Below, one piece after another: positions 4,712 to 59,717 of a stretch of 64,000 nucleotides of DNA (positions within the stretch are counted from its first letter, which is position 1; the number at the start of each line of letters is the position of its first letter). The position numbers and the translations under genes were made by a program. The stretch spans positions 29,574,001 to 29,638,000 of the forward strand of contig NC_043002.1 of the NCBI RefSeq assembly GCF_006345805.1. The letters run 5' to 3'. A model generated the notes under the pieces. It made no database searches. It saw nothing but the letters and a program-made list of their open reading frames with translations, and was not told where the DNA came from. The stretch is from Octopus sinensis (taxonomy: Eukaryota).

Positions 4712-4749
4712 ACCAATGCTTTCCTAGCAATTACCGGGTACGTCGGCTA

Positions 4750-4787
<38 letters not shown>

Positions 4788-4825
4788 TAGCTGACGTACC
4801 CGGTAATTGCTAGGAAAGCATTGGT
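4712..4825. repeat. 114-bp palindrome: 39-bp arms (1 mismatch) around (TA)18
   Basis: 4712-4750 is the reverse complement of 4787-4825 except at 4745. Confidence 0.95.
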
Positions 4826-5918: not shown

Positions 5919-5969
5919 TATACTTGTACCTCGCAGGTGGAATTTCTAGATATAATTCCATGGCCCAAG

Positions 5970-6061
<92 letters not shown>

Positions 6062-6123
6062 TGAGAGAGCCCCTTGGGTCATGGAATTACATTTAGAAAT
6101 TCATCCGTCGAGGTACAAGTATA
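5919..6123. repeat. Foldback/MITE-like inverted repeat with a self-complementary (CT)n(TA)n(AG)n core
   Basis: About 61-bp arms (TATACTTGTACCTCG ... CGAGGTACAAGTATA) with 7 mismatches; TA at both ends. Confidence 0.85.
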
Positions 6124-6681
6124 GGGGTAGTTTTTTTACGGAAAACCAGCAATCACCCATGCATACAAGGCCGATACATTTTTGCACCAGTGAAGTGGAG
6201 CAACGTGAGTGAAGTGGACAGCGTGAAATAAAATGTCTTGCTTAAGAACACAACATACTGCCTCATGAGTGTTAGCCCGACACTAGCCACTGAGCAGTGT
6301 ATATATGGATGGATGTATGCATATATTATATATTTGCGCCAGATAACATTTCATGTGTTGTGACGGTAGATTTAAACCACATGTCAGCATATCTTTATTT
6401 AAAATGGTGATAAGTAATATGAACATATGTCGGCAGGTCTAAATATGCGAAGAATTTCTATTGAGAATTTAGTTCGAGTAACATAATGCACAAATTATCT
6501 TTGAAACAGAGGCCAAATCCAGAAATATCGTTACTAATTTTACGTTATGTAATACTGTCCAATATTCACGTATAATATGTTTATAATTACTTCAACTAAA
6601 TGTTTACTAATACATTTCGAATATTCTCTACATCAATTAACTTAGGGGAGATCCGCTATCTATATATATTATATATATATA

Positions 6682-6714
<33 letters not shown>

Positions 6715-7311
6715 TGAGAGAGCCCCTTGGGTCATGGAATTACATTTAGAAATTCATCCGTCGAGGTACAAGTATAGGGGTAGTTTTTTTACGGAAAACC
6801 AGCAATCACCCATGCATACAAGGCCGATACATTTTTGCACCAGTGAAGTGGAGCAACGTGAGTGAAGTGGACAGCGTGAAATAAAATGTCTTGCTTAAGA
6901 ACACAACATACTGCCTCATGAGTGTTAGCCCGACACTAGCCACTGAGCAGTGTATATATGGATGGATGTATGCATATATTATATATTTGCGCCAGATAAC
7001 ATTTCATGTGTTGTGACGGTAGATTTAAACCACATGTCAGCATATCTTTATTAAAATGGTGATAAGTAATATGAACATATGTCGGCAGGTCTAAATATGC
7101 GAAGAATTTCTATTGAGAATTTAGTTCGAGTAACATAATGCACAAATTATCTTTGAAACAGAGGCCAAATCCAGAAATATCGTTACTAATTTTACGTTAT
7201 GTAATACTGTCCAATATTCACGTATAATATGTTTATAATTTACTTCAACTAAATGTTTACTAATACATTTCGAATATTCTCTACATCAATTAACTTTGGG
7301 GAGATCCGCTA

Positions 7312-7313
<2 letters not shown>
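6061..7313 (+). repeat. Tandem duplication with a 653-bp period
   Basis: 6061-6660 matches 6714-7313 with 2 one-base indels and 1 substitution; junctions lie in (TA)n(AG)n. Confidence 0.95.
6150..6300 (-). mobile_element. Family C SINE fragment (also duplicated at 6803-6953)
   Basis: GTGGACAGCGTGAAATAAAATGTCTTGCTTAAGAACACAAC is homologous to the core of 51463-51706. Confidence 0.65.
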
Positions 7314-7348
<35 letters not shown>

Positions 7349-8705: not shown

Positions 8706-9024
8706 TATATATATATATATATATAAGTGATGTTTAACGCTGGTATAATTCAAATACTTTTAATTCCGACACATGTTTCGAAGATTTCACTGATATTATT
8801 CCAAAGGAATATATGGTGTGAAACAATGTAATCTTCTCTTCAGGGAGGTGAAGAAATGAAACTCGTCAATAAGACATATACAAAAACTTCCACGTAGACC
8901 CGAAGTTTCTATCTTTAAAAAACAAGGAGTTACAACCTTTTTACTTGTGTAATTTTTTGCTACCCTGTAACTATCTATTTTTCCGTGTTAATTGTTAACA
9001 AGGGAAAATACACTCATCTATATG

Positions 9025-9068
<44 letters not shown>

Positions 9069-9075
9069 ACTACAA

Positions 9076-9450
9076 ACACTCCTCTAACGGAGGTCTCAAA
9101 AGACATTTTAAGATCCACAAAGAGCAGAACTTATCCGCAGCTCTTAGTGGTCCAAATCAGATGTGTGGGCGTCTTTTCAAAACATTGTCTGGTTTAAAAA
9201 GCCATATCAGATGCCATGATGGTTCTAAGATGTAGGGACAGGATGCAGTCAAACTCTGCATAAGGAGTAGACAGCCACCATGTATGTATGTATGTATGTA
9301 TGTATGTATGTATGTATGTATGTATGTATGTATGTATGTATGTATGTATGAGTGCATGTATTTATGTATGTACGTGTGTATGTGTGTATGTATATATGTA
9401 TGTATGATGTATGTATGTATGTACGTATGTACGTGTGTATGTATGTATGT
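9076..9450 (+). mobile_element. RTE-like LINE 3' end with C2H2-like C-terminus and (ATGT)n tail
   Basis: Translates GGLKRHFKIH...MCGRLFKTLSGLKSHIRCH...stop, then a short 3' UTR ending CAGCCACC and an (ATGT)n run from 9280. Confidence 0.6.
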
Positions 9451-9728
9451 TCTAAACCCAAAACGTGGTAAGTTAAGTTATAGATATTATATTAATCAAT
9501 ACAGCAGTGAACTTTCGAGTTCTTTGTCGCTTTATATAATCGTTTATCCTCAAGATCTCCAGAGTGAAGGAAGCTTCTTTTCCATGTTCTATATGTCCAT
9601 CGTAGTGATGATTAATTGGAGCAGGCACTAAGCTCCCTTATTTTATTTAAAAAATCATTTCTGCTTCCAGTGAGGATGGACCAATAATTCGCACCACTAC
9701 ATGGCATACATCCACCGCTAATTTGCCT

Positions 9729-10324
9729 GATAAATTCTAGATTGAATTTTTTTCTGATCTTCCACAGAGGGTAGACGAATTGTTTTCCAACTTCTAGCTT
9801 CATGTGTTCTTTTCTTATCTTTTTATTTATCTATTTATTATTATCACTGGGTTTTTTTTCTATAAATTTTAGTTTCACGAATTTTTCCACAAGCCCTCTT
9901 TAACCTCATGCTATGTCTATTCTGGAAATGTATTCGTTCTTAAGATTATCCCCAGGAATTATATAGTCATTGTACATTAGTACCAAAAACGGACTAAATA
10001 TCAAAAACCTACGTGCTTCATTGAGAGACAATGTAGCACGTAGGTTTTTGATATTTAGTCCGTTTTTGGTACTAATGTACAATGACTATATAATTCCTGG
10101 GGATAATCTTAAGAACGAATACATTTCCAGAATAGACATAGCATGAGGTTAAAGAGGGCTTGTGGAAAAATTCGTGAAACTAAAATTTATAGAAAAAAAA
10201 ACCCAGTGATAATAATAAATAGATAAATAAAAAGATAAGAAAAGAACACATGAAGCTAGAAGTTGGAAAACAATTCGTCTACCCTCTGTGGAAGATTAGA
10301 AAAAAATTCAATCTAGAATTTATC
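9729..10324. repeat. Near-perfect 596-bp palindrome
   Basis: Arms 9729-10017 and 10035-10324 differ by 1 substitution and a T8/A9 indel; an inner 5-bp stem CATTG/CAATG leaves a 5-nt AGAGA loop. Confidence 0.97.
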
Positions 10325-10814
10325 GTGAATATTATTTAATACATCGGAATTCATGTTTATTCTACACGTAAACGCAACCAGCGTCCTTGAGTTATTGCCC
10401 CATCTTACTTCCGTTTTATTTCTCCCTCTCTCACACACACACATTCACAAACATACTCGCACTAACACACACACACGCAATCACACATACATATACATAC
10501 CTATCATAGTTTAGCCATATTTATTAATAATGTTGCTTGTTATAATATGTTTTCTTTGGGGATTTATCTACTTCATATTATCTTCTTTGCTTACAATACG
10601 CAAACGCTACATATAACTTCCTGTATTAAATTTGGAGAGGGCGAAATTCCTTCCATTACAACATGAGACACGAAGCTGGTCCCAAAGCAGGAACACCCAA
10701 TCAGGGCTAGAGCAGGGGTGCTAGCATATATTAAATATAATACATACCAATACATACATGCACACTCCCGCAAGCATATACTTAACTTATCGGTTCAGAT
10801 GTATGTAAGTATAT

Positions 10815-11808: not shown

Positions 11809-12045
11809 AAACTGGAAGAATCGTTAGCACGCCGGGTAAAATGCTTAGCAGCAGTTCTTCTGTCCTTACATTCTGAGTTCAAATTCTACCGATGTCCGCT
11901 TTGCGTTTATACTTTCACGGTCGATGAAATACGTACAACTTGGGTAATGGAATCGATGTGATCGATTTTTCTCCTCCCCACAAATCCAGGTTTTGTGCCT
12001 ACCTAGAGTAGAAAGGATTATTATTATTATTATTATTATTATTAT
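11809..12045 (+). mobile_element. Family A SINE with (ATT)n tail
   Basis: CTGGAAGAATCGTTAGCACGCC head, B-box-like GAGTTCAAATTC, 3' end GTAGAAAGG(ATT)n; homologous to 36334-36545. Confidence 0.8.
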
Positions 12046-12280
12046 AAGGCGGCGTGCTGGAAGAATCGTTAGCACACTGGACGAAATGGTTAGGGGCAAT
12101 TCGCACAGTGCTATGTTCTGAGTTGAAATTCTGCCGAGATTGATGTATCCATTTACCCTTTCGAGATCGATAAATTAAGTACCAGTGAAACACTGCTGTC
12201 GATGTAATAAAGTTATCCACGCCCTCAAAATTTCAGGCTTTGCGCCTTTAGTAGAAAGGATTATTATTATTATTATTATT
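12046..12280 (+). mobile_element. Family A SINE with (ATT)n tail, full length
   Basis: AAGGCGGCGTGCTGG head through GTAGAAAGG(ATT)n. Confidence 0.85.
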
Positions 12281-12282
12281 AA

Positions 12283-12390
12283 TGTCGTTGGCACACTGGG
12301 AAAAACGCTTTGCGGCATTTCTTCCGTCCTTACGTTCTGAGTTCAAATTTCGGAGTCGACTTTCCCCTTCAACATTTTGGGGTCCACTAA
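12283..12390 (+). mobile_element. Family A SINE, partial
   Basis: GTTGGCACACTGGGAAAAACGCTTTGCGGCATTTC...TTCTGAGTTCAAATT matches the family A 5' half. Confidence 0.65.
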
Positions 12391-12660
12391 ATATCTTCTT
12401 CTTCTTCTTCATCTTCTCCTTCACCTCCCCCCTCCTCCTCCTTTTCCTTCTCCTCCTCCTTCTTCTCCTTTCCTTCTCCTTCTTCTTCTTCTATGTTTGG
12501 CTTTTGCTTTGTATTTGTGCAAGTTGACTTCATGTCACACCCAGAGACCTCAAGAGACAACAAGTTAAAAGTACAAGTTGGTGTTATGACTAGGGTGTCA
12601 TATATTTTGGTTTAGCATAGAGTATTGTTCTAGAGAATGTCTGTCCAAACATAAGTAAAT

Positions 12661-13606
12661 TGGAAGGCCCTCCACCAGGCGGGCAATGCGGTCGGTTACA
12701 GCTCCACTCTAGCGTTCTATAGAGGGTTAGTGGAGGAAAAATGCGACGACGTTCTCGGGGAAACTCTAGGCGTTGAAGACGACGAACTGAGCGGTCTGTT
12801 CGGGAGGACTTTCGGGCCGGGGCCGATGGATAATTTCCAGAGTCTCTCGCCTGGCAGTGCTACCGAGGGCTCTGCCTGTCGAGATAAACTCTACCGGCAC
12901 GGAAGTGCCGTCAGCCGGGCCTGCCCGAGGTGTTGCCAGGACGACGAAACCGTTCTGCACGCACTCGTCCAGGCCCGAGTATTGCTGAAATATGGGTTTA
13001 TGTCGAACAGCTACTGTCACGTGTAGGACGGATCCGACTATCGGCCGAATCCATAGTGAAGATTGCCCCGCCGACCTCCTTTAACAAGGAGGCGAGGCCG
13101 TTTTCTTGTGCCTTGTGGCTGTGGCGAAAGAAGTCGTGTGGTGGACTCGTTTGAAAGGCTAAAGTCAGAACTTTCCTCTTTGGTCAAGGCCTCATCAACT
13201 TTTCAAGTTTCACTTGAAAAGGAAGATGAGGTTAGAGAGGAAAGTGCTGTCCGATAGCAAGTTTTGAAAGGTGGGTGAATTGTGCGAGACTGGCCTGTAT
13301 AAAGGGACCAGTTCTCAGGTTCGCCTGTAATTTCAAAGAAAAAGGTATGTAAAAGGAGAAGAAAGGGGACTCTCTACACCCCCGTTTTTTGACCAGGCTC
13401 CCGTTGGCTTTTGTAGGTTTTTTCCACCAGGAACCTTTCGAGACGTCTCCCTTTTGGGAGTTTTTCATTGTTGAATTTTATAAGTTGTTATAAAGATTTT
13501 TACTCGATGTTTTTAAAAAAAAACGGCAAAACCCTTTGTAACCTTTCGTCCTGTCTTGTCCTTTATGTAATCATGCGTGTCAGCCCTTGTGGCCAATAAA
13601 AAAGAA
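12661..13606 (+). mobile_element. Tx1/L1-clade non-LTR retrotransposon 3' fragment (zf-RVT-type C-terminus and 3' UTR)
   Basis: Frame-corrected reading SLAWQCYRG(A)LPVRDKLYRHG...CPRC...ETVLHALVQ(C)PSIAEIW; GC-rich against the background; T-rich 3' UTR ending AATAAAAAAG. Confidence 0.75.
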
Positions 13607-13708: not shown

Positions 13709-13873
13709 TCAAGGCGAAGAGCGCGATCCGATTGTAAGACATTTTATTAGTTGAACGATATTTCAACAGAAGACTTTGTCTTCTTATTTTGAACTTGACA
13801 AAGACAGACGTACTTTTGAAATATCGTTCAACAAATATAATATCTTACAATCGAATCGCGCACTTCGTCTTGA
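13709..13873. repeat. Imperfect hairpin, arms of about 73 bp, about 85% identity, 18-nt loop
   Basis: TCAAGGCGAAGAGCGCGATCCGATTGTAAGA... pairs with ...TCTTACAATCGAATCGCGCACTTCGTCTTGA. Confidence 0.9.
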
Positions 13874-14221: not shown

Positions 14222-14369
14222 AAATTCCGCCTTTGCCTCTCATACTCGACTTTGCCTCTCATACTTTCGGAGTCCATAAATTCCTTACCATTTACGCACT
14301 AGAATCGATGTAATCGACTAGTGCGGTCTCCCAAATTTCAGGCCTCTCACCGCCAGTAGACGGGAATAT

Positions 14370-18591: not shown

Positions 18592-19336
18592 TATAAAATA
18601 AGACGATGTAATAAGAGCTATAAATGAAATGAACCGAACTCAGTTACTGGCACTAATGGATTCCGAGCAATCCCTTAAAAAGCATGTAAGCGAGTCCTAG
18701 CAAGACCACTGCTGTCCCTCTTCCAGAGCTTCCTTGCAACTGGCAAATTTCCAAGCAAGCTCAAGGACGGTAAAATATGCTCTATGCATAAAGGAAGTAG
18801 CAGAACAGAGGTCAAAAACTATAGACCTATCTCTCTAACCTCGCACTTCGGCAAATCATGGAACGAATTGTCAAAAAGAAACTAATCACCTTCCTTGAGA
18901 AATGTGATTTGCTGACTGACACCCAACATGGTTTCGAACCAGGAAGAAGCTGCATGACTCAGTTTTTACTACACTATGACCGGGTGTTGAAACAGTTGCT
19001 CAACCACTCAAATTTGGATGTGATATATCTCAACTTTGCAAAGGCCTTCGATAAGCTCGATTATGGAATGATATGTCACAAACTACGTGATCTTGGCATA
19101 GTCGGGAAATTGGGAGAATGGCTGCATGCCTTTCTGAAAGATAGAAGTCAGGTAGTAGTAGCCAATGGGGACACCTCCATTGACACACGAATAGTGAGTG
19201 GTGTTCCGCAAGCCAATGTTTTAGGACCACTACTGTTCATAATAGTCCTGTCAGAATGTCGCCATCACAAGTTATGCAGATGATACAAATGTCTCACAGT
19301 AGATACAGAACCCTGAAGACGCTATACACCTGCAAT
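18592..19336 (+). mobile_element. CR1/Jockey-group LINE reverse transcriptase remnant
   Basis: NYRPISLTSH...QHGFEPGRSCMTQ...DVIYLNFAKAFDKLD...SGVPQANVLGPLLF...YADD after a frameshift; multiple lesions. Confidence 0.88.
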
Positions 19337-21072: not shown

Positions 21073-21131
<59 letters not shown>

Positions 21132-21255
21132 CCTTTCTACTATAGGCACAAGGCCTGAAATTTGGCGGGAGGGGAATAGCCTATTACATTGACCCCAGTG
21201 TTTCACTGGTACTTAATTTATCGTCCCTAAAAGGATGAAACGCAAAGTCGACTTT
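21132..21255 (-). mobile_element. Family A SINE 3' half; its tail is the (AAT)n at 21073-21131
   Basis: Reverse complement ends ...GGCCTTGTGCCTATAGTAGAAAGG(ATT)n. Confidence 0.8.
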
Positions 21256-21261
21256 TGAAAA

Positions 21262-21362
21262 TTTCAGGGTCGGTAAATTAAGTACCAGTGAAACGCTGTG
21301 GTCGATGTAATTGATTAGTCCCCCTCCCTCAAATTTTAGGCCTTGTGCGTATTGTAGAAAAG
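21262..21362 (+). mobile_element. Family A SINE 3' half
   Basis: GGTCGGTAAATTAAGTACCAGTGAAAC...GGCCTTGTGCGTATTGTAGAAAAG. Confidence 0.8.
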
Positions 21363-21425
<63 letters not shown>

Positions 21426-21557: not shown

Positions 21558-22310
21558 CTATTGTATGGAAAGTGTTCTGCGTAGGATGTGTGCAGTGCCT
21601 AGTAGTGCAATTTTCTGTATGTTATATGTGTTTGTAAGTCCTGGTGTTTTTGTTATGTATTTGTCTGAATATTTTTTTATCATGCCTAATGCACCTACTA
21701 TGATAGGAATTGTTTCTGTTTTCAGGTTCCACATTCTAGTTACCTCTATCTCCAGGTCTTTGTATTTTGAGAGTTTCTCCACTTCTTTTAGGGACACGTT
21801 GTCATCTGCCGGTATTGATACATCAATTAGAAAGCATTTTTTTTCTTCACGATCTCTGACAACTATATCTGGTCTGTTGGCCTTAATTTCTCTATCTGTG
21901 TGTATCGGCATATCCCAGAGTATGGTTGCTTTCTTGTTTTCTGTGACCTTTTCTGGTGTGTGCCTATACCATTTTCTGTTGTTATTCCATAATGTTGGCA
22001 TAGCTTCCAATGTATGTAGGTTCCAACTCTGTCATGTCTGTGAACATATTCCTTCTTAGCCAGGACTGGGCAGCTAGAGATAATATGATTTATTGTTTCT
22101 TGTCCATCTCCACATATTCTGCAGTTACTTGTAATATTTCTTTTCGTTACATGTTTTTGGTAATTTCTGGTGGGGAGGCTTTGGTCTTGTGCTGCAATTA
22201 AAAATCCCTGTTTTTCTGCTTTGAGTCCTGAGCTTCTCAACCATTGCTGGGATTTTTCTTTGTCTATTTCTTTTGCGTTTAGTTTAGTGCAGTATTTACC
22301 ATGAAGGGGT
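21558..22310 (-). pseudogene. R4/Dong CCHC finger and restriction-like endonuclease
   Basis: CRICGDGQETINHIISSC, RHD, NRPDIVV...LIDVSIP...EKLSKYKDL, PIIVGALG. Confidence 0.95.
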
Positions 22311-22529
22311 TTTTTCTTGCCATCGTTTTATCATGGCTCGTTGCTGTTCTATTTTTAGTTTGGATTTCATTTGTTTTATAGCTTTTGTTGTTTCTTCATC
22401 ATCTTCTTCTTCTTTGTGTTTATTAGGTGGTATGATTTCTTGTTTGTATTTGTCAGCTTCCTTAAATACTGAGAACAGTTTTTTGTTTTGCTCGTGTTTT
22501 GCTGCTATCTGGATCAGTTTTCCTTCCTT

Positions 22530-23850
22530 CTAAAGTAGGTATTTTTGCAGTCCTATGGTGGTTATTTTATAGTAGTTTTCCAGCTTTATAAGGCCTCTAC
22601 CACCTTCTATACGTTGTATATATAGTCTTTCTATGTCAGATTTTGGGTGATGCATCCTAGATCCTGTCAGTATTTTTCTTGTTTTCCTATCTATTTTGGA
22701 CAGTTCATTTCGTGTCCAGTTAAGGATATTGTAGCTGTAACTTATAACTGGGACAGCTAAAGTGTTGATACCTATTATCTTGTTTTTAGCATTGAGCTCT
22801 GTTTTTAGTATTGATCTAACTCGTCTATAATATTCTTTTTTTATTTTCTCTTTCATTTGTGTGTGTTGTGTCTTATCTAGTCATAGATTCCTAAGTATTT
22901 GTAAGTTTGGCTTTGGTCTAATTCTTTTAATTCATTGGTTTTATCTAGTGTGATGTTGTTACTCTTAACTAGTTTTCCTCTTTTCATGGTTACTTTGGCG
23001 CATTTTTCTAATCCAAATTTCATATCTATTTCTTTGGTAAATCCATGAACTGTCTTTAATAGTGTTTCCAGCTGTTTGTCATTTGCAGCGTATAGTTTTA
23101 GGTCATCCATATATAAAAGGTGGCTGATCGTTTTGCCGTAACATTTATATCCGCATCCAGTTCTATTTAGCATATCAGATAGAGGTGACAGTGCCAACCA
23201 GAAAAGGAGTGGAGAGAGCGTGTCTCCCTGGAATATTCCTCTTCTAATGGGGATGTCTTTGGTTTTCATGAGTCCCTCTTTTGTTTGGAGGTGTAGGACT
23301 GTTTGCCATTTATTCATAGAGTGCTCTATGAATTTTATGATTGTTGGTGCTACTTTGTTAATGGCTAGTGTTTCGAGGATCCATGTGTGGGGAATGCTAT
23401 CAAACGCCTTTTTGTAGTCAATCCAGGCCATACTGAGGCCTTTCTTCTTTCTGTGGCTGTCTTCAGTTACGGCTTTATTAATCATTAGTTGATCTTTACA
23501 GCCATATGAGCCCTTGCAGCATCCTTTCTGCTCTTCTGGGAACAGTTTGTTTTCGTCCAGGTGCTTGTTCAGCCTTTGCGATATCACTGCAGTAAATGCC
23601 TTGAACATAGTAGGGAGGCAGGTTATTGGTCTGTAGTTTTCTGGTTTTGTTGTTTCGTTTGATTTGGGAATTAAGATGGTTTTCCCCTTCGTGAGCCATT
23701 CAGGCATTGTCTCTGGCTCTGCTAGTATGCTGTTAAAGTTTTCAGCCAGCTTTTTGTGCATTCCTGTTAGATATTTCAACCAGAAGTTGGGGATCTTGTC
23801 ATGCCCAGGTGCCTTCCAGTTGCTTAGTTTTTGCAGTGCCTGGGTGACCT
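22530..23850 (-). pseudogene. R4/Dong reverse transcriptase domain
   Basis: WKAPGHD, NYRPITCLPT, EQKG, AWIDYKKAFDSIPH, GIFQGDTLSPLLF, LLYMDDLKLY, FGLEKCA, YKYLG, LYIQRIEGGRGL. Confidence 0.97.
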
Positions 23851-24382
23851 CTTCAGTTGTTATGGGGGTCCAAAGTTTTCAGATGCCGAGTTTGTTATCT
23901 TCATACTCCTTTTTTTTGGCTGTTCGTTCGCCGACCATATTTCTTTCCAGAATTCTTCCAATTCTTCTGCCGTTGGTGCTGCAGTGACTTCTATTTTATT
24001 TTTGCCCAGTTCTTGGTAGAACTTTTTGGGGTCGGAGTTGAACTTTTTGTTCTGTTCAAAGAAGCGTTGGCGTTTCTCGTACCGGCGGATCCTTTGAGCT
24101 TTGGCAAGGATATCTTGCTTCAGCTTTTCTTTTATCTCCGGCAAATCTTTTTCTGTGATGTTATATTTGCGGAGCATTTTTGTTCTCTTTTTGTTGCTCA
24201 GTAGCGTTGCTTGTTTGCTGATTTCATTAAGAATCGACAGGTCTTTTCTAATTTTTTTATTTTGTTTTGGATGTTATTTATCCACAGGGTTTGTTTGGGT
24301 GGTGGTACTCCTGTTTGGGCGGGTTTGGGTGAGTATCCAGCTTCTTTTGTGGCTGCAGTGGCTGCTGCGTATATCAGGTCAT

Positions 24383-25192
24383 TTAGTTCAGTGATATCAC
24401 TTTTTTTGTTTCAGTGGCTAGTTCAGTGACGGCTAGGTTTATGTTGTTTATAATTGGCGTTGTTATTGCGTTTATTTTTATTCTTGGGAGGTATGGTCGG
24501 TGGTCCATTTTGAGCTCTGTGGTTTTTAGTTCTTTGATTATTTTATTTTTTATATTATCATAATCATTAGGCTCCCCTTCGTTGTTTACATCGTGTTTGT
24601 TGGGAATGTTGCGTTTGTCTTCGTGTTTTACAGTTTCAGTGTTTATATTATTGGGCATTGTTGTGTGGCTTCTATCTACATTTTCCTGGTGTATTTTTTC
24701 TTTTAAATGTTCTATTTCTATTTCTGATATTTTTTTGGCTTTGAGAATGTATCTTCGTACGTTAGCTAATTTATTAGGGTTCATTGCTGTATCCAAGTCT
24801 ATATCTCTATTATTTTCCTTCCATATTTTATATGTATGTGTTGTTGTATTTTCATTTTGTGGGTAGAGCATTGCTGTGAAGTATGCGTGTAAGATCGAAA
24901 TGTATTCCTCACGTGTCCATTTACGTCTTTTGGGTTTTAATTGCGGGACATGAGGTACAACGTCCGGCCCATTATTTTGACGGTCGTCATTTTCGTAGGG
25001 TACCGGTCCGTTTATTTCTGTTGTCACATTATTTCGCACGTGTAGTTTTTCGTACATTTTTTGTTGTAGGTTTAATGTACGTACCGCTCGATTGTTATTC
25101 TTGGGTTGAATAGTATCGGTGGCATTTAATTTCTTCGTAGTTCCTTTGTACATGGTGTTTGAGGTCGGGGATGATCGTGTTGTTCCACGCAT
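24383..25192 (-). pseudogene. R4/Dong ORF N-terminal region
   Basis: RRKWTREEYISILHAYF...NPNKLANVRRYILK motif typical of R4-clade N-termini; continues after an A-run frameshift as DITELNDLIYAAA. Confidence 0.8.
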
Positions 25193-25415
25193 GTTTACAT
25201 GTGTTGTGTTAGAGGTGGAGATAATATCGAGTCAAAATACATCATTTCGTTTCGAAAATAGTAATAAATTTCAATTCGTATTACTTACTCGGATATTGTC
25301 CAATTCTTTGTTAGTAAATCTTTGGCTCCATAGGGTGTCCTTGTTTTCGATGTTTGTGGATAGATTTCGGAGCTCTGTATTTTCCTTCTTACATCTTAAA
25401 CGTCCCCGGTGTCTT

Positions 25416-27695: not shown

Positions 27696-30259
27696 GTATA
27701 CTTTTGAGCGTACGTTGTTCTAAATTATCAGTGACGGTTTCCCGTGGTCAAGAGTAGACAGCCATAATACGCACGCCCACACATGCAAGCACACACGCAC
27801 ACACATACACATATGCAAGCATGCATACACACACACAAAAAAGAAGTATATATATATATATGTATGTATGTATGTATGCATATATGTATGTATAACGTCG
27901 AAGCCACTATCAACCTTTCCTTGTAAAATTTGAATACACAAGTACTCAACTAAAAAGTATTGAGTAATCATTTAGCTTGACGATAAACTGTTTTTGTATA
28001 TAATTTTGACGTGCAGATACTAGAGTATATAATATATAAACGTATGTACGTACAAATGCACATGCATGTGTTTGTGTGTGGGGGTATATATGAATATATG
28101 TCTGTGTGTGTAGTATACATGAAACTACACATCAGGAGATCCCAACATTAATTGAAGGCGTACTCAATACATATATCTAGTGTATTAAAATTAACGTGTA
28201 GAAGGAAAAGTTTGATAATGCCCCCGAAATTTTATCGATGATTAGTTTTGTCCAACTGTCTAAATTGACACCGGCCGTACCTCGAAGTATCCACCAAAAT
28301 TTCGAAGTATAAATTAATATAGTAATGAATGAATGTGTCTATTAATGTGAGTACATGGACACTTATATAACTGTGTGCGTGTGTGTGTGTATGCGCGTCT
28401 ACGTGTGTGTGTATATGTGTTTATCGTAAGAGAACACGTTTGTCTATCTGAATATATGTATATATTCACGTAGGTTTCTGAGCGTACACATGTGAGTGTG
28501 TTTGGACGTTTGTGTGTATGTGTGTTTATAAAGAGGCAAATAAGATAAAAGTTTTTATTTCTTTGCCGACTTATTTGCGATTTTCAAAGATGTCTGATCG
28601 GTTAGGTGTGGTAGTGTATGGCTTTGAATGTTGGTGGCGAGTGAGGTTGAAAGAAGATGTGTAAAAGGTCTGACAACATAAACAAACACAAGTGATAAAA
28701 CAGATGGTAGGGATAACTTTATAAAGATTCCCTTCTGTCGAGATTGGGAAATGTTCATAATGGAAATATGCAAACAGTGAGAAACCTAAAGCCACGCAGA
28801 TCACATGTACTCACGCGTACACACTTTTACAACCAGCGCGCACACATAAACTACACAAAAGTACACACAAGCACATATATGTGTGTGTGTGTGTGTATTA
28901 CGAGTGCCTCTGTATGTGTACAATCTTAAATAGTCCAAAACCTATAAACCTATAAACCTACAATCTTAAATAGTCCAAAACACCGGTGTTGTTTTAGCAT
29001 TGATGAGAATAGAATAGTGTTGAATTCCCATCTCTGAGGTATTTTGGTCGATCGAATATGAGATCGAATGAGATGTGCTGAAGTGTTGCATTGCATCATT
29101 TTCAGGTACGCTATACTATTAGAAACGTACGGAACTGATAAATCACGAATACATTTCTATTCTTTTGTGTTCATGTATACACAGACACATACATATATAT
29201 TTATCAATATATTTATATGTATGTATGTATGTATGTATGTAAGTATGTATGTATGTATGTATGTATGTATGTATGTATGTATGTTATGTATGTATGAACA
29301 CACACACATCTATCTATCTATCTACCTATCTACCTGTATATATGTGTGTGTGTATCTGTGAGTATGTCAGTGAATGTGTGTGTGCGTGAGTAAGTGTGTG
29401 TGTGCGTGTGTGTGTGGTTTCGTAAGATCGAAACAAATTACGTAGACAAGTTTGCGGATAAGATGTTTTTACAATTGTAATCCGCAAACTCGTATTCTAG
29501 CGAGCTTGATAAACATTTCACTCCATTGCGAGAGCTGAGATTTTTTTCTTTTTTTTTTTTTTACCACCGACATATGTAGTATATAACTGTATATACGAAA
29601 TAATGTAACCCGCGCACACTTACGGCTCGATAACATGTACCATGCTTTTGCTAATTGTTTTAGGTGCCTATCGAGCAGTGATCAGATAGGGATCTCTCTC
29701 GACTCTCCCCACTCTTTAGTCCATTTCTTTCAGACTACAAATGATGTGCAACCAATAGTAATGACTATTGTTGATGTAAAAGTGTTGAACCATCCAGTAA
29801 TAATAAGAAATTACTATGCTAATTTAAACAATAGGTAGAATCGAGGCCATAGTAGCCCCGTAGCTAGAAAATCAACGAACACAACAACAGCAACAACAAC
29901 AGCAGCAGAAGCAACAAGAAGTCGTGACTTATCCACAGCCGTTGCTGTCTCATGTATTGAAGAGTACATAGGAGCAGAGCCAGATTAAAAGAGAGTGAAG
30001 GCGAAAATTTCCCCGCGCCTCCGAGTATAATGCTTCCCCAGCTACGATGGGAATGTAGCACTCAGTACAGGGAAGGGCCAATTCCCAGTTACTTGACATG
30101 AAGAGGCTCTGCTTCAATATACAAAGGTATCTTGACTTCCTAAAAAATGTAATGGATTCTCTGTTATGATAAATTACTATAGATTTTGCCACTTTAGAGA
30201 CACCAGAGCAACTGCTGTCGCTGCTTTTGGGACATATGCATGTATGTACTTATGTATTT

Positions 30260-30433: not shown

Positions 30434-31390
30434 AGTTATTTTGGTGAGGCATTGAAAACTGGACTTATTTTATGAAACAACAAAGTATGGAATATGCTCC
30501 AAAATTAAAATTTTGAATTAGTTATAGTTATTGTTATCAACATTTAGTTGAATTTAATTATCGTTATCAACATTTAGTTGAAATTAGTTTTAGTTATCAA
30601 CAGATAAAAACCTTTGTTTTCGGGTTATTTTTGTTTGTATGTATGCATATATGTGTTTGCAGAATTGGATGTTTTATGTATGTTTTCTTATGCATATAGT
30701 TGCATATCTAGGCATACTCATATATATTTAAATGATAAATTTCTGGAGAGTGTTATAGATTTTTACTGTTCCACTGATGGATTTGATCTGTAGTCTTCGA
30801 ATTAGCTTTCTTCTTTCTGATTTTGAGAAGCCTAACTTCTCAAGATTGCTATCTAGGCAGTGTGTTACCTATCTCAAGCCCCAAATAATTACAGGGTTAA
30901 ATCTGAACTTGTAATCTGGATAGAGTAACTGTAGATTTCTCAATAGTTCGGCATAGGTGTTCTCTTTTTCACTGATCTTCAGCTTTATGTTAACATCGGC
31001 TGGGCAGCTAATTTCCACAAATGTCCACAGTTTCTCTTCTCTATCCCAAATCACTATATCAGGTTTGTTGTGCTTACATTTTACTGAGGTCTTCACTAGT
31101 ACCTTCCACCAGTATTCCTTTTTATTCTGAGTGGCTATGGCTTCTACCATATTGTGGGTTCTTATTTGTTTGTCTTCGGGATTACCATTCCGATGGATTT
31201 CATTATAGAGTGTCCTAGCTACAACGTCATGTCTCATCGGTAGATAATACCGTGATGACATTTTCGGACAACTGTTTATCATGTGGGTGATATCTTCAGT
31301 GTTAACACCACAAAGTCTGCATCGTTTGTTACATTTTACAGCTTTGCCTGTATGTCGATCTCTTTTCTGCATCAGGTACTTGGTTGATAT
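30434..31390 (-). mobile_element. RLE-LINE family 2, 3' fragment with 3' UTR
   Basis: CRLCGVNTEDITHMINSCP, RHD, NKPDIVIWD...VEISCPAD...EKENTY; stop at 30728; 31-bp tandem repeat in the 3' UTR (30530-30600). Confidence 0.9.
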
Positions 31391-32427
31391 ATATGTATGT
31401 ACGTACGTATGTATGTATGTATGTATGTATGTATGTATGTATGTATGTATGTATGTATGTATGTATGTATGTATGTATGTATGCAAGTATGAATATATGT
31501 ATGCATGTATGTGCGTATGAATGTATGTATACTTGTATGTATATATTTACATATATATATATATTTATATATATATATATATACATACACATATGTATGT
31601 GTGTACGTAAAGATAGATAGATGTATACACTGATGGATTTAGTGCGCAAAAGTTTCTATGTGTGTGTATGTGTATACGAATGCGCGCGTGTGTGTATATA
31701 TATATATATTAATATATATATTTCTTTATTGCCCACAAGGGGAAATATATATATATATATATTATGTGTGTAAGTAAGTATGTATGTATACTTACGAATG
31801 TGTGTGTGTGTGTGCTGTGTCTCTTCGTGGTTTTGAGTGAGAGCACACCTAAATGATAGGTAGATGGGTAGATAACTACCGAGAAACAAAGTGAGTGAGA
31901 AAGAGAGAGCGAGAGAGAGAGAGAGAGAGAGAGAATGGCAGAGAAAAGAGAGAGATGAGAGAGCAGGAGAGAGTGGGAGAGATAGTCAGAGAAGTGTTTA
32001 GAGCAAATTTCATTTCTACATTATTTGTTCATGAACTAAAATGTTTGTGTGTATGTCTAAGTTTTTATGTATTACATTTCCCTATTATGTGAGTAAAGAA
32101 ACGCATGTGCGGTGTGGGTATGCGTATTTTATATTCTTTCTGTGTGTGAGTGCGGGCGCGTGTGTCAGTGGGTATGTATATGTGTGTAAATGTGTGTGTT
32201 TGTGTGTACGTGTGTGTACGTGTGTGTGTGTGTGTGTGCATGTGCCTCTGTGTGATTATACGAATACGCACTCGACACATATATATTCACATATTCACAC
32301 GTATATCTATAATACAAGGAATACAAAGTTATGAAAGCAGCAGCAAAAAAAAAACAAAAACAATATATATTTTATATATATATATATATATATGTAAATA
32401 TATATATATATGTAATATATATATATG

Positions 32428-34053: not shown

Positions 34054-34307
34054 GAATATGGTAGTGTATCCTCTTATATAAGCCCACTCAAACTCACATA
34101 TATACCAACACAAATATATTTATAGATAGATAGCATATCTTGTGAAGACTCGAAGAATCTTGCGTTCTAATTTAGTTGTTCCACGTGAAATGTGTTTACA
34201 CCAAAGTGCTCCCCTCTTACAGATTAACAGCAAAAATCAAATTCATTATTAAAATACAGAAAGGAGCTTTTACATATAGATTATATATGAATATACAAAT
34301 CACAAAC

Positions 34308-34471
34308 AGGTGCTGGAGTGGCTGTGTGGTAAGTAGCTTGCTTACCAATCACATGGTTCCGGGTTCAGTCCCACTGCATGGCAACTTTGGCAAGTGTCTT
34401 CTACTATAGCCTCGGGCCGAATAAAGACTTGTGTTTGAATTTGGTAGAGGAAAACTGAAAGAAGTCCGTTA
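34308..34471 (+). mobile_element. Family B tRNA-derived SINE, head and CORE-like segment
   Basis: A-box-like TGGCTGTGTGG, B-box-like GGTTCAGTCCC, then TTGGCAAGTGTCTTCTACTATAGCCTCGGG. Confidence 0.8.
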
Positions 34472-34536
34472 TATATATATATATATACATACACACACAT
34501 CGATAGATAGAAAGACAGATAGATTTATGCGTGTCT

Positions 34537-36046: not shown

Positions 36047-36333
36047 AACAACTCCAGTTTTTATGAAATCGATAAAGCATTTGGCACTATGCTGTGGTGA
36101 CCCATCTTTTCCTTCTCTGGTCGCATCCTCACAAAACTGGAAAGCAATTCGCAACGAATTAAGATTTGTGCTGAGGTTATAAATAACTATATCATACCGA
36201 AAACACCGGTGTCTTCCCATTAACGAAGTTAAACCGAGTCTGTTTTGTAATCAAGCTAAACCACAGTTAGGGAAACTGGAATACTCAAAGATACTTCATT
36301 TACAATTCCTTCATCAGAATTGATGCCTTCTTT

Positions 36334-36545
36334 AGGCGGTGAACTGGCAGAAACGTTAGCACGGCGGGTGAAATGCTTAGAGGTATTTCGTCTGTCTTTA
36401 CGTGTTGAGTTCAAATTCTGCCGAGGTCGACTTTGCCTTTTATCCTTTCGGGGTCGATAAATTACCTATCAGTTGTGTACTGGAGTTGATCTAATCCACT
36501 GGTTCCCACCCTCAAAATTTCGGGTCTTGTGCCTAGAGTAGAAAA
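36334..36545 (+). mobile_element. Family A SINE, full length
   Basis: GGCGGTGAACTGGCAGAAACGTTAGCAC...GAGTTCAAATTC...GTGCCTAGAGTAGAAAA. Confidence 0.85.
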
Positions 36546-37677
36546 TAATTGATGTTTACTAATCTCCATCTATAATACCAACTGCTCTTCTTAGGTTGAA
36601 AACTATGGACTGCCAATCGGTTATTTTTCAGCTGTCTTTTTATATCAACTGTATTTTAATTATTAAAATTATCCGTCTACATAATTCTAGGTTTCCCCCT
36701 CTTCCTTTGTCCTCTTTTATTTTCCTTTCTATTAGCAATGTTTAGTAATAATTTCTTTCTGATTAAGTTTCAAAAATATTTTAGTTTTCTCTCTTTGGCG
36801 GTATCTTATAAAATATTTTTAGCTTTGACTATTTTAGTATTGTAACTTTATTTTTATGTTTTCTTTACGATATTCTCAAAATTCTTTTACATTTCCACAT
36901 CTCAAAATCTTGTGACCTATTTGATAGCATTATACTTGTGTTGATGTTCAAATCTGACCTCAATATGGTAGAGTAGACATCATTTAACATTTTACTTATA
37001 TTCTTCTGTTATCTATATTAATGTTGCTTCTTATTAACTTGCTTGCAAAAACTACCTAATAATATTTAAAGATTCAGGGATGGAGAAGTCACATTATCCG
37101 ATAGAGAGCCGACGACATACCTTGTAGAAGTTATTCTGTTTTTTGTTTCTATGTCCTGATTTGGAAAGATACCGAAAAAATCTTTGCACCCTGGTGTCGA
37201 TTAATTAAGATATATATAAAGCTCTTGGTTTGACATAACCGAATAACGGTTTTACCGGAAATTCCTGGCCTTGTACCTATACTAGAATTCATTGCTTGGA
37301 GATTGATGATGTTCTTTGTCAATAATATCGATAGAATATTTTGTCAATTTTCAAGGGACACCAAATATCACGAATGATTATGATACATATATAAAAAAAA
37401 GATATGATAAGCTCTCGTTTATATGTAAAATCCCACTGGCTGGAATCGTTCTCCGTATATATCGCATGCAATGCATCCGTGTTAACAATTAAACTACAGA
37501 TTCCCTATAGCGTCAGTATTTCTAGCAAGTCAAATGACCGACTTGTTGCAGTATATACCTATGCGAACTCTAAGAAGGTAGGCCTGTTACTACATTGTTC
37601 CTAGTATTTTCTCTTCTCAAATTGGTCTTTGTTATGTTTAGTTTCTTTTGCATTATTAACATTGGCAGAAGGTTGCG

Positions 37678-38069: not shown

Positions 38070-38138
<69 letters not shown>

Positions 38139-38320
38139 ATACATACATATACACGACGGGATTCTTTCAGTTTCCGTCTACCAAATCCACTCACAAGGCT
38201 TTGGTCGGCTCCAGGCTATAGTAGAAGACACTTGCCCAAAGTGCCACGCAGTGGGACTGAATCCAGAACCATGTAGTTGGTAAGCAAGCTACTTACCACA
38301 CAGCCCCTCCTACGCCTATA
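37837..38320 (-). mobile_element. Family B SINE, full length with internal (CA)/(TA) microsatellite
   Basis: Head at 38320, CORE-like part, internal microsatellite, 3' part ...CAGCATGGCCGCAGTCAAATGACTGAAACAAGTA and an A-rich repeat tail. Confidence 0.9.
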
Positions 38321-38396
38321 TTATTTCAATTTTTATTTTCATTTATTTTTTAAGAGCAAGAACAGACAAAACTTGCATGACATTAAGCTTGAAGAG

Positions 38397-40989: not shown

Positions 40990-41830
40990 TTTAGTGTTAC
41001 TGCCTACATATGTACTGATGGTGGCGAAGGTACAAGTAGTGGTGATGGTGGTGGAACAACTAATGGAGGGGTTGTTGGTGATGATGGTTACAGATGGGGT
41101 GATGATGGTGATGATAATGTTAGTGCTACTGTTGTGATGGTGATGATCTGGTGTTGTTGGTGGTGGTAATGGTGGTGTTGAGGCGGTGCTGGTGCTGGTC
41201 GTGGAAGTGACAGAGATGGTGATGTAAGAGTAGTGGTGTTGATAGAAGTGGTACGGTGGTATTAGTAGTACTGGTGAGAAAGACGATGGTGGTGGTGGTG
41301 GAGATGGTAGTGGAAGTGATGGTGGTCGTAGTGGTGGTGGTGGTAGTGGTGATGGTAGTAGTGGTGGTGGTGGTGGTGGTAGTGGTGATGGAGGTGGAGG
41401 CGGCATTGGTGGTGGTGAAAGCAGTGGAGATACTGTATTAAAGATTTTGGTTTGCTGGTAGTGGCTGAAATGTTAGTGGTGGTGGTGGTAGTGGTGGTGC
41501 TAAAAATGTTGTTGATAATAGCAATGATGGTTACTGCTTGTGGTGGAGAGGTAGTGGTGTCTTCTTTTCGTAGGGTTGGTAGTATTGTTGCAGTAAGGGA
41601 TGATGTTGGTGGCGTTGCTGTTGTATACGATAGTAGTGATGGTGGTGTCAGCGATGATAACAGAGTGGCGATCGTGATGGTGGTGTTGGTGGTGATGCTA
41701 AAACTTATGATAGTTTCAGATCGGGTGGTAATGGTGGCAGCGGTAGTAGTGCCGAGGTGGTGGCGGCGGTGGTTGTGTTGTGGTGTCGGTGGTGGTGCTG
41801 GTGTTGGTGGTGAGGGTGATAATAATACGT
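40990..41830. repeat. (GGT/GAT)n low-complexity region
   Basis: Degenerate trinucleotide repeat; ORFs are Val/Pro/Thr homopolymer-like. Confidence 0.85.
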
Positions 41831-54138: not shown

Positions 54139-54286
54139 TACGGATAAAGTGTTCGCTTCGCAGTCAAGAAATTCCAGGTTCGATTCCATTGCTTTGGACA
54201 TCTAGACCAAATTTTATTTCAAGAACCTCCAGATGCTCCATGGCTTATGAATGAAATTGGTTTGACGGATAATAGATAGAATATAT

Positions 54287-54488: not shown

Positions 54489-54506
54489 GTTTGTTTCTGT
54501 ATATAT

Positions 54507-55269: not shown

Positions 55270-55394
55270 AAACTACGTAGAATATTGTCGGATGAATTTT
55301 ACCCTTTCTTTAAAAACACATTCTTTAAATGTCAGTGTTACAGTAATTCCGTCCAAAAATTGCGTCAATGAATCACACGTCTTTGTGATCAACC

Positions 55395-59680: not shown

Positions 59681-59717
<37 letters not shown>

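What the first reader, a model, noticed from the sequence alone, without database searches (positions are those of the whole stretch)
9729..10324. 596-bp near-perfect palindrome of non-repetitive sequence with a 5-nt loop
Seen: arms of about 290 bp differ by one substitution and one homopolymer base, there is no TSD, and the arms match no repeat family in this window. Established: long palindromes with tiny spacers are unstable. If real, it is very young, homogenised by arm-to-arm conversion, or selected, for example as a hairpin-RNA/endo-siRNA source or ADAR substrate. The T/T mismatch and imperfect centre fit a fold-back priming event. A chimeric-read artefact is the main alternative.
Basis: partly seen in the sequence, partly recalled or inferred. 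Interest (0 to 1): 0.7.

Follow-up and report, generated by a model that had tools for sequence, protein, structure and literature searches.

The report
Young fold-back inverted duplication, 596 bp
A 596-base stretch of non-coding animal-type DNA reads almost the same on both strands; it is most likely a recent copying accident in which DNA folded back on itself, and it is one of several such accidents of different ages nearby, so it is real but of a known, ordinary kind.

Summary
The palindrome is in the sequence exactly where stated: arms 9729-10023 and 10029-10324, loop AGAGA. There is no flush TSD and no other copy in the window. No known RNA family reaches threshold and there is no gene or domain nearby.

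Best explanation (about 0.6): a real, young, in-situ inverted duplication. A strand folded back on the 5-bp inverted microhomology CATTG/CAATG, about 296 nt were copied, and the end was joined to the right flank.

The strongest new evidence is local. At least three other TSD-less palindromes of unrelated unique sequence lie within 4.7-13.9 kb, with arm identities of 97%, 89% and about 87%. Two are centred on self-complementary (TA)n tracts. Locally shuffled controls gave none.

The documented long-read foldback artefact gives A-B-B'-A', not the A-B-B'-C seen here, and the centre holds no adapter. An artefact (about 0.17) and a palindromic MITE (about 0.12) are not excluded, because neither the source genome nor any related assembly could be reached.

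It is not PATRR-like at its centre. The hpRNA, siRNA and ADAR roles are untested. Verdict: a new member of a known kind, of modest interest.

The parts
9729..10023 (.). Left arm of the palindrome (295 nt, 30.5% GC, non-repetitive)
   Evidence: 99% complementary to the right arm. No other copy in the window.
10024..10028 (.). Unpaired centre (loop) AGAGA; symmetry centre at base 10026
10029..10324 (.). Right arm (296 nt, 30.1% GC), the reverse complement of the left arm
10019..10033 (.). Turn-around: CATTG-AGAGA-CAATG, a 5-bp inverted microhomology with a 5-nt loop. It is bounded by the T·T mismatch at 10018/10034. With that mismatch tolerated, the seed is 9 bp (GCTTCATTG/CAATGTAGC). This is the proposed fold-back primer.
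   Evidence: Sequence read directly. DNA fold of the central 61 nt is -27.6 kcal/mol with exactly this 5-bp tip. Its role as primer is inferred.
9756..9756 (.). G opposite T at 10297: a transition difference between the arms, taken as a post-duplication mutation or a heterozygous site
10193..10201 (.). A9 run opposite a T8 run in the left arm: a one-base homopolymer length difference
9451..9728 (.). Unique left flank between the (ATGT)n microsatellite (9280-9450) and the palindrome; the junction has no TSD
10325..10420 (.). Unique right flank, unrelated to the left flank, running into a CA-rich microsatellite. This is the proposed end-joining junction at 10324/10325, or the native continuation if the right arm is the original.
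4712..4825 (.). Sibling event 1: a 114-bp palindrome with 39-nt unique arms (1 mismatch, at a CpG) around (TA)18; no TSD and no spacer
5919..6123 (.). Sibling event 2: a 205-bp palindrome with about 55-nt unique arms (7 differences) around (CT)n(TA)n(AG)n; no TSD
13709..13873 (.). Sibling event 3: an inverted repeat with 61-nt unique arms at 89% and a 43-nt spacer; no TSD

Best explanation
This is a genuine, evolutionarily young, in-situ inverted duplication of about 296 bp of unique non-coding DNA. It was made in one step by intrastrand fold-back synthesis. Proposed sequence of events (inferred): a double-strand break or stalled nascent strand exposed a 3' single strand ending in ...CATTGAGAGACAATG. 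The strand snapped back on the 5-bp inverted microhomology CATTG/CAATG, leaving the 5-nt loop AGAGA. If a T·T mismatch is tolerated, the seed is a pre-existing 9-bp imperfect inverted repeat. A polymerase then copied the strand's own upstream sequence for about 296 nt. The displaced product was joined to the other end without homology, which produces no target-site duplication. The mirror-image history, with the right arm as the original, is equally possible. The two other arm differences (one transition, one homopolymer base) arose afterwards. The element probably has no function. It persists because its centre is not AT-rich and is interrupted by a spacer and a mismatch, features that suppress cruciform extrusion. 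If it is transcribed, it would form a 295-bp dsRNA.
For: Shown:
- One arm is the exact reverse complement of the immediately adjacent arm, with a sharp outer boundary and two unrelated unique flanks.
- There is a 5-bp inverted microhomology, a 5-nt loop and an adjacent mismatch at the turn-around.
- There is no TSD.
- The arms contain no subrepeats, no coding homology and no domain.
- The process appears recurrent at this locus. Three more TSD-less palindromes lie at 4712-4825, 5919-6123 and 13709-13873, with arm identities of 97%, about 87% and 89%. They share no sequence with each other or with the target except (TA)n.
- Controls: 0 complex short-spacer inverted repeats in 5 locally shuffled windows and 1 marginal mirror repeat.
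- 2 of 71 (TA)n tracts have complex reverse-complementary flanks, against 0 in the mirror control.
- Diverged arms cannot come from one chimeric read, so inverted duplications are real in this genome.

From the literature:
- The same architecture has been demonstrated at yeast DSBs: inverted microhomology next to the break, Pol delta synthesis, and capture of the other end by NHEJ with 0-5 bp of microhomology (PMC11724301).
- Replication template switching creates perfect hairpins in one event (PMC8794818).
Against: - No ancestral or alternative allele could be examined. The source species and its relatives are absent from every searchable collection.
- The copied tract (296 nt) is longer than the documented ranges: 2 to about 150 bp at yeast breaks, and up to 59 bp for the template-switch mutations.
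- Microhomology at the distal junction cannot be scored without the ancestral sequence.
- A 5-bp primer is short.
- The two non-central arm differences could also be heterozygous sites or consensus errors.
- The nearby palindromes show that such events happen here. They do not prove that this one did.
Confidence: 0.6

Rival explanations
1. Assembly or library artefact: the second arm does not exist in the animal and was introduced by chimeric molecules or reads (fold-back during end repair or amplification, a missed hairpin adapter, local mis-assembly or polishing).
For: Near-perfect arms, where one of the three differences is a homopolymer length, a typical long-read error. Foldback reads are a documented artefact of ONT gDNA libraries at about 0.6% of reads and can recur at the same site (PMC12870357). 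Whole-genome amplification makes palindromic chimeras (PMC6218980, abstract seen). The centre shares the 8-mer TTGAGAGA with the SMRTbell adapter stem. No independent assembly could be consulted.
Against: The documented artefact folds near the read midpoint and gives A-B-B'-A'. Here complementarity stops sharply after 296 nt and the flanks are unrelated (A-B-B'-C), so two precise switches would have to be carried into a consensus. The adapter match is 8 of 45 nt, and about 2% of random 15-mers of this (GA)n-rich window match as well. Substitutions between the arms are not expected if both were called from the same molecules, unless the sites are heterozygous. Older palindromes with diverged arms lie next to it, and these cannot be read artefacts. 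There are no Ns or gaps near it.
Confidence: 0.17
2. A palindromic non-autonomous transposon (a hairpin-type MITE or foldback-like element) that inserted here recently. The arms would be its terminal inverted repeats meeting in the middle, and a TA duplication would be hidden inside the palindrome ends.
For: MITEs can be almost wholly palindromic (own knowledge, not tested here). A self-complementary TA lies 2 nt inside each end, so a Tc1/mariner-type TA duplication cannot be formally excluded. Absence of a second copy in 64 kb is uninformative for a large genome (inference). The window is full of mobile-element debris.
Against: No TSD is flush with the ends. The TA reading needs two further chance-complementary bases on each side. 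As far as I know, the inferred termini (AATTCTAG...) resemble no superfamily consensus (memory, not tested). The arms have no subrepeats, unlike foldback elements. No second copy exists in the window, and nothing matched in metagenome, viral or prokaryote collections or among ORFs of 5.8 billion proteins. The neighbouring palindromes are mutually unrelated in sequence, which does not fit a family.
Confidence: 0.12
3. A selected hairpin-RNA gene: the locus is transcribed and the 295-bp duplex is processed into endo-siRNAs (hpRNA-like), or serves as an ADAR substrate or sponge, with the arms kept alike by selection or arm-to-arm conversion. This concerns function and is compatible with a fold-back origin.
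For: The RNA would form an almost uninterrupted 295-bp duplex. Drosophila hpRNAs are born as inverted duplications and can be very young (PMC10317233). Generic miRNA-hairpin models score on both strands.
Against: Known hpRNA arms carry homology to a target gene or TE. These arms match nothing in the window or in the protein collection. All Rfam matches are below their gathering scores and symmetric on both strands, so they reflect structure only. No gene, exon or domain lies nearby. High arm identity is fully explained by youth. There are no expression data.
Confidence: 0.05
4. Retro-insertion of a self-primed (snap-back) cDNA: a reverse transcriptase copied an RNA, the cDNA end folded back and copied itself, and the hairpin product was integrated.
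For: LINE reverse transcriptases are or were active in this genome. Snap-back second-strand priming is a classical property of reverse transcriptases (own knowledge).
Against: No poly(A)/poly(T) at the outer ends, no TSD, no LINE or SINE tail, and the arms resemble no transcript-like or repeat sequence.
Confidence: 0.02

Closest known systems
[quoted passage not shown]
   Same: An inverted copy of the sequence immediately next to the junction; a short inverted microhomology and small loop at the turn-around; a homology-poor distal junction with no target-site duplication; the result is a longer inverted repeat.
   Different: 296 nt copied, against a documented 2 to about 150 bp with most under 14 bp. 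Seen here as a fixed or segregating germline allele in an animal-type genome, not in a reporter assay. The break, the polymerase and the joining pathway are all inferred.
Replication template-switch mutations that create perfect hairpins (PMC8794818, PMC5453318, PMC10710096)
   Same: A single event that writes a reverse-complement copy next to its source and gives a perfect stem with a short loop; intrastrand hairpin-loop priming has been proposed.
   Different: Those events are tens of bases long (the largest in that study was 59 bp) and were detected phylogenetically. No phylogeny is available here, and the tract is 5-10 times longer.
Human palindromic AT-rich repeats (PATRR22 about 600 bp, PATRR11 about 450 bp; PMC1851657)
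   Same: The same size class; a non-repetitive, near-perfect palindrome in non-coding DNA; expected to be hard to clone, amplify and assemble.
   Different: PATRRs have a highly AT-rich centre (1-3 G/C in the central 20 bp), relatively GC-rich ends and no spacer. This one has 8 G/C in the central 21 nt, AT-rich ends (13% GC in the outermost 25 nt scored), a 5-nt spacer and a mismatch next to it. It therefore resembles the stable 'quasi' construct more than an unstable PATRR.
Drosophila hairpin-RNA (hpRNA) loci (PMC10317233)
   Same: A long inverted repeat with a short loop, of recent origin by inverted duplication.
   Different: hpRNA arms derive from a target gene or TE, and the loci are defined by Dcr-2-dependent siRNAs and a primary transcript. 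No target homology was found here and no RNA data are available.
Long-read foldback read artefact (PMC12870357)
   Same: A forward segment followed at once by its reverse complement, with little or no intervening sequence.
   Different: The artefact is symmetric about the read midpoint and continues back into the same flank. Here the inverted copy ends after 296 nt and joins a different unique flank, inside a gap-free 64-kb consensus.

Membership tests
Fold-back / template-switch inverted duplication | The new segment is the reverse complement of the directly adjacent sequence | tested here: met
   Arms 9729-10023 and 10029-10324, 99% complementary.
Fold-back / template-switch inverted duplication | Short inverted microhomology with a small loop at the turn-around point | tested here: met
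   CATTG-AGAGA-CAATG: 5 bp, or 9 bp with one T·T mismatch.
Fold-back / template-switch inverted duplication | No target-site duplication; distal junction with 0-5 bp of microhomology | tested here: inconclusive
   No TSD. Microhomology at 10324/10325 or 9728/9729 cannot be scored without the ancestral allele.
Fold-back / template-switch inverted duplication | The ancestral or allelic state carries a single arm in place | not testable with these tools
   No related assembly could be reached.
Fold-back / template-switch inverted duplication | Size within the experimentally documented range | tested here: not met
   296 nt, against 2 to about 150 bp and up to 59 bp. Larger foldback inversions exist, but they are chromosome-scale events.
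PATRR-type unstable palindrome | Near-perfect non-repetitive palindrome of several hundred bp | tested here: met
   596 bp, 99%.
PATRR-type unstable palindrome | Highly AT-rich centre (1-3 G/C in the central 20 bp) with relatively GC-rich ends | tested here: not met
   8 G/C in the central 21 nt. GC in 30-nt bins outward from the centre: 0.33, 0.33, 0.33, 0.37, 0.37, 0.23, 0.10, 0.33, 0.47, 0.13. Criterion taken from PMC1851657.
PATRR-type unstable palindrome | Central symmetry without a spacer | tested here: not met
   A 5-nt spacer plus a T·T mismatch at the sixth pair.
PATRR-type unstable palindrome | Cruciform extrusion, size polymorphism, breakpoint clustering at the centre | not testable with these tools
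   Needs plasmid or 2D-gel assays and population data.
hpRNA / endo-siRNA locus | Long inverted repeat able to form an extended RNA duplex | tested here: met
   -496.5 kcal/mol, z about -80.
hpRNA / endo-siRNA locus | Arms homologous or antisense to a target gene or TE | tested here: inconclusive
   No match in the window or among 5.8 billion proteins for any reading frame, but the source genome itself could not be searched.
hpRNA / endo-siRNA locus | Defined primary transcript and Dicer-dependent 21-22-nt small RNAs from both arms | not testable with these tools
   No RNA data.
MITE / foldback transposon | Target-site duplication flanking the terminal inverted repeats | tested here: not met
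   None flush with the ends; only a self-complementary TA 2 nt inside each end.
MITE / foldback transposon | Multiple dispersed copies | tested here: inconclusive
   None in 64 kb; genome-wide copy number is unknown.
MITE / foldback transposon | Foldback type: arms built of tandem subrepeats | tested here: not met
   No tandem or direct repeats inside the arms.
Rfam miRNA precursor families (MIR2863, MIR7993, mir-3927 and others) | Score at or above the family's gathering threshold, on one strand | tested here: not met
   Best 78.8 bits against a threshold of 94. Scores are equal on both strands, and there are no hits at gathering level.
Long-read foldback read artefact | The fold lies at the read midpoint and the second half retraces the same flank (A-B-B'-A') | tested here: not met
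   Complementarity ends sharply at 9729/10324 and the flanks are unrelated. Definition taken.
Long-read foldback read artefact | Adapter remnant at the junction (missed-adapter type) | tested here: not met
   Only an 8-nt match to the SMRTbell stem, found in about 2% of random 15-mers of this window.
Long-read foldback read artefact | Lack of asymmetric spanning reads | not testable with these tools
   Raw reads are not available.

The most novel reading that the evidence does not exclude
The target may be the newest product of an unusually active, lineage-specific mutational process: TSD-less fold-back inverted duplication of unique DNA, often seeded by hairpin-forming (TA)n microsatellites. 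Four such events lie within 9 kb here. In that reading, this microsatellite-saturated genome continually makes long perfect hairpins, which are raw material for hairpin-RNA genes and dsRNA-editing substrates. The 596-bp one would be transcribed and processed.
Probability: 0.2. Interest if true: 0.55.

Novelty: new member of a known kind. Interest (0 to 1): 0.33.

Why it matters
If it is real, the locus is a clean natural example of a several-hundred-base fold-back inverted duplication caught young, with the priming microhomology still readable. That is longer than the events documented experimentally. Together with its older neighbours, it suggests that hairpin-forming microsatellites seed inverted duplications in this genome. 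Such a process could generate fragile sites, assembly and PCR problems, and new dsRNA-forming loci. For annotation, the practical points are to flag the site as a possible structural polymorphism and a mapping hazard, and not to call it a miRNA or a transposon.

Tried and rejected
1. Independent assemblies. Exact-product look-ups of ORFs crossing the left junction and the centre found nothing.

2. Proxy nucleotide search. A 399-aa concatenation of all long reading-frame segments of the flanks and arms, searched against 5.8 billion proteins, gave no hit.

3. Arm words in other collections. Metagenome, viral and prokaryotic genome contigs all gave 0 matches.

4. Naming the organism:
- The window's LINE RT has relatives that are at most 56% identical and unnamed.
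- Pieces of the window's SINE are not printed in any searchable paper.
- From memory, the SINE and microsatellite style resembles octopod cephalopods. This is untested and nothing in the report depends on it.

5. Known RNA family. There are none at gathering level. The relaxed hits are generic miRNA hairpins, equal on both strands. No tRNAs were found.

6. Gene or TE context. There is no Pfam domain within about 2 kb. The nearest traces are LINE debris at 12.6-13.0 kb and 18.8 kb.

7. Missed-adapter artefact. Rejected.

8. Transposon TSD. An exhaustive offset scan found nothing flush with the ends.

9. Other origins considered and set aside:
- L1-type twin priming inverts different segments and does not duplicate one.
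- Viral hairpin termini or ITRs: no viral ORFs and no match in viral contigs.
- DIRS or Crypton repeats: no recombinase or RT is adjacent.
- Helitron hairpins are far too small.

10. Method note. My first two scans for short-spacer inverted repeats were flawed: the first seed rule was too strict, and the complexity score penalised long arms. Only the corrected scan is used. Searches are superseded.

Full report
**Observation.** The region was read directly and the arms were aligned outward from the centre. The left arm is 9729-10023 (295 nt), the loop is AGAGA at 10024-10028, and the right arm is 10029-10324 (296 nt), 596 bp in total.

The arms differ at three places:
- a T·T mismatch at 10018/10034, the sixth pair from the loop;
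- a G·T pair at 9756/10297, which is a transition;
- one extra A in the right-arm A9 run against T8 on the left.

Beyond 9729 and 10324 complementarity falls at once to chance level, 6 of 11 positions in AT-rich DNA.

As RNA the region folds into one 295-bp duplex at -496.5 kcal/mol, against -123.6 +/- 4.7 for shuffles. As DNA the central 61 nt fold with a 5-bp tip, a one-pair bulge and then continuous stem. In a self-comparison of the whole window, this is the only long, complex, high-identity self-complementary hit. The other long hits are (TA)n-type simple repeats.

**Setting.** The window is eukaryotic in style:
- about 35% GC and no Ns;
- saturated with (TATG)n, (TA)n and (CA)n microsatellites;
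- broken LINE reverse-transcriptase genes;
- a multi-copy SINE-like element with microsatellite tails;
- no tRNA genes and no Rfam family at gathering level.

The palindrome sits in a roughly 970-bp island of unique sequence, between an (ATGT)n array at 9280-9450 and a CA-rich tract from about 10420. No reading frame within about 2 kb has a Pfam domain. Neither the arms nor the flanks occur elsewhere in the 64 kb. I stress that this says little about genome-wide copy number.

**Attempts to reach other assemblies.** All of them failed:
- Exact look-ups of ORFs spanning the left junction and the centre found nothing.
- A concatenation of every long reading-frame segment of the flanks and arms found no relative among 5.8 billion proteins.
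- Complex 24-26-mers from the arm are absent from metagenome, viral and prokaryotic genome collections.
- The window's best-preserved RT has relatives that are at most 56% identical and unnamed, so the source lineage is not represented.
- The organism could not be named, and SINE fragments appear in no searchable paper.

From memory, the repeat style looks octopod. That is a lead, not a result.

**Is it a transposon?**
- An exhaustive offset scan found no direct repeat of 4 nt or more flush with the ends.
- The only formal candidate is a self-complementary TA two bases inside each end, which any palindrome can show.
- The arms contain no subrepeats, unlike foldback elements.
- The relaxed Rfam matches (MIR2863 and others) score equally on both strands and fall below their thresholds. 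They detect a generic hairpin, not a family.

**Is it an artefact?**
- The documented long-read foldback artefact is a read folded within 10% of its midpoint, so the second half retraces the first. It affects about 0.6% of ONT genomic reads and is virtually absent from HiFi (PMC12870357). It predicts A-B-B'-A'.
- Here the inverted copy stops after 296 nt and joins a different unique flank, giving A-B-B'-C. Two exact switches would have to survive into a consensus.
- The centre holds no adapter.
- These arguments lower the artefact reading but do not remove it. The homopolymer difference is a typical consensus error, and the substitutions could be heterozygous sites.

**The most informative result is local.**
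- A corrected scan for complex inverted repeats with spacers of 60 nt or less (my first two versions had faulty filters and are not used) found the target and four others.
- Five locally shuffled windows gave none, and a mirror-repeat control gave one marginal hit.
- One of the four, 52856-52905, is a short 22-nt, microsatellite-like repeat and is not considered further.
- Another, 21130-21364, is an inverted dimer of a multi-copy repeat family and is a different thing.
- With the palindrome seen earlier at 5919-6123, that leaves three sibling structures:
  - 4712-4825: 39-nt unique arms with one mismatch at a CpG, around (TA)18;
  - 5919-6123: about 55-nt unique arms with seven differences, around (CT)n(TA)n(AG)n;
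  - 13709-13873: 61-nt arms at 89% with a 43-nt spacer.
- These three share no sequence with one another or with the target except (TA)n. None has a TSD, and none has other copies in the window apart from a tandem duplicate of one arm.
- Of 71 (TA)n tracts, two have complex reverse-complementary flanks, against none in the mirror control.
- Palindromes whose arms have diverged by 3-13% cannot come from a chimeric read.

So this stretch of genome really does accumulate TSD-less inverted duplications of local unique DNA. The target is the largest and youngest of the series, at 0.7% arm divergence (Poisson 95% interval 0.08-2.4%) against about 13% for 5919-6123.

**Mechanism.** The anatomy matches fold-back synthesis. 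In yeast, resection next to a break exposes a short inverted microhomology that forms a hairpin. Pol delta extends it, and the displaced strand is captured by the other end through NHEJ with 0-5 bp of microhomology. This yields inverted duplications of 2 to about 150 bp (PMC11724301). Replication template switching likewise writes perfect hairpins in a single event and can use hairpin-loop priming (PMC8794818).

Here the turn-around is CATTG-AGAGA-CAATG. The adjacent T·T could be a pre-existing mismatch inside a 9-bp imperfect seed, or a misincorporation at the first added base. Both are inferences. At two of the siblings, the self-complementary (TA)n tract would have served as the hairpin.

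Which arm is ancestral cannot be told. The predicted single-arm allele is either ...B-AGAGA-CAATG(T) joined to GTGAATATT..., or the mirror arrangement. The copied length of 296 nt exceeds the documented experimental ranges, so this is a large example of the kind and not a textbook one.

**Stability and function.** Human PATRRs are the nearest named palindromes by size (PATRR22 is about 600 bp). They are defined by a very AT-rich centre (1-3 G/C in 20 bp), GC-richer ends and no spacer. A 9-bp spacer plus four central mismatches abolishes their cruciform extrusion and their instability in E. coli (PMC1851657).

The present centre has 8 G/C in 21 nt, a 5-nt spacer and a neighbouring mismatch, and its ends are AT-rich. 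It therefore fails the PATRR criteria and is expected to be comparatively stable. This removes the need to invoke selection or homogenisation to explain its presence.

Drosophila hpRNAs are born as inverted duplications. They carry homology to a target gene or TE and are defined by transcripts and Dicer-2-dependent siRNAs (PMC10317233). No target homology was found here and no RNA data exist, so the siRNA and ADAR ideas remain untested possibilities.

| Reading | Probability |
|---|---|
| Real, young, in-situ fold-back inverted duplication | about 0.6 |
| Assembly or library artefact | about 0.17 |
| Palindromic MITE | about 0.12 |
| Selected hairpin-RNA gene (a function, compatible with the first origin) | about 0.05 |
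| Snap-back cDNA insertion | about 0.02 |

It is a new member of a known kind. Interest is modest. What raises it somewhat is the local series of sibling events, and the hint that hairpin-forming microsatellites seed them.

Noticed in passing
window 4712-4825: A 114-bp palindrome: 39-nt unique arms (one mismatch, at a CpG) flanking (TA)18, with no spacer, no TSD and no other copy in the window.
   Followed up: partly
window 5919-6123: A 205-bp palindrome: about 55-nt unique arms with 7 differences around a mirrored (CT)n(TA)n(AG)n core. It is older than the target.
   Followed up: partly
window 6029-7334: A tandem duplication with a period of about 653 bp at 98-99% identity. Its boundaries lie in (TA)n tracts, and it includes the right arm of the 5919-6123 palindrome but not the left, so it is younger than that palindrome.
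   Followed up: partly
window 13709-13873: An inverted repeat of unique sequence with 61-nt arms at 89% and a 43-nt spacer that itself contains a small inverted repeat. It is followed directly by a (TCA)n microsatellite.
   Followed up: partly
window 21130-21364; related copies at 11812-12392, 14246-14345, 36331-36549, 54284-55271: A multi-copy repeat unit of about 180-220 bp (it begins ATCCTTTCTACTATAGGCACAAGGCCTGAAATTT). It occurs as an inverted dimer at 21.1 kb, as direct tandem copies at 11.8-12.4 kb, and as a tandem array with a period of about 180 bp at 54.3-55.3 kb. The family was not identified.
   Followed up: no
window 34283-34491(+), 38130-38346(-), 49988-50166(-), 53731-53902(+): Four copies (about 78% mean column identity) of a SINE-like element of about 170 nt, each ending in a TA/TG microsatellite tail. 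From memory it resembles an octopod SINE. Its sequence pieces were not found in searchable papers.
   Followed up: partly
window 21561-25231 (-), 18825-19280 (+), 30872-31546 (-), 12593-13151: Decayed LINE elements. The first is a nearly full-length copy with its ORF1-like and RT regions split over several frames. The closest database relatives of its RT are only about 55% identical and unnamed.
   Followed up: partly
window 55395-55678 / 56665-56948, and 55903-55995 / 56996-57088: A 284-nt inverted repeat pair at 89% separated by 986 nt, overlapping a 93-nt direct repeat pair at 98% with a spacing of 1093 nt. It may be a composite or rearranged element.
   Followed up: no
window 10019-10030: The palindrome centre contains TTGAGAGA, identical to 8 nt of the SMRTbell hairpin-adapter stem. 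About 2% of random 15-mers of this window match as well and the rest of the adapter is absent, so I judged it a coincidence.
   Followed up: yes
window 8999-9232 (+) and 28558-28810 (-): Short reading frames with C2H2 zinc-finger-like remnants (for example ...LKRHFKIH..., ...CGRLFKTLSGLKSHIRCH...). Pfam gave no significant hit for the first, and the second was not tested.
   Followed up: partly
window 40000-42000 and 58000-60000: Strong positive GC skew (0.39 and 0.35 in 2-kb bins), with long low-complexity proline/valine-type reading frames, i.e. purine/pyrimidine-asymmetric simple sequence.
   Followed up: no
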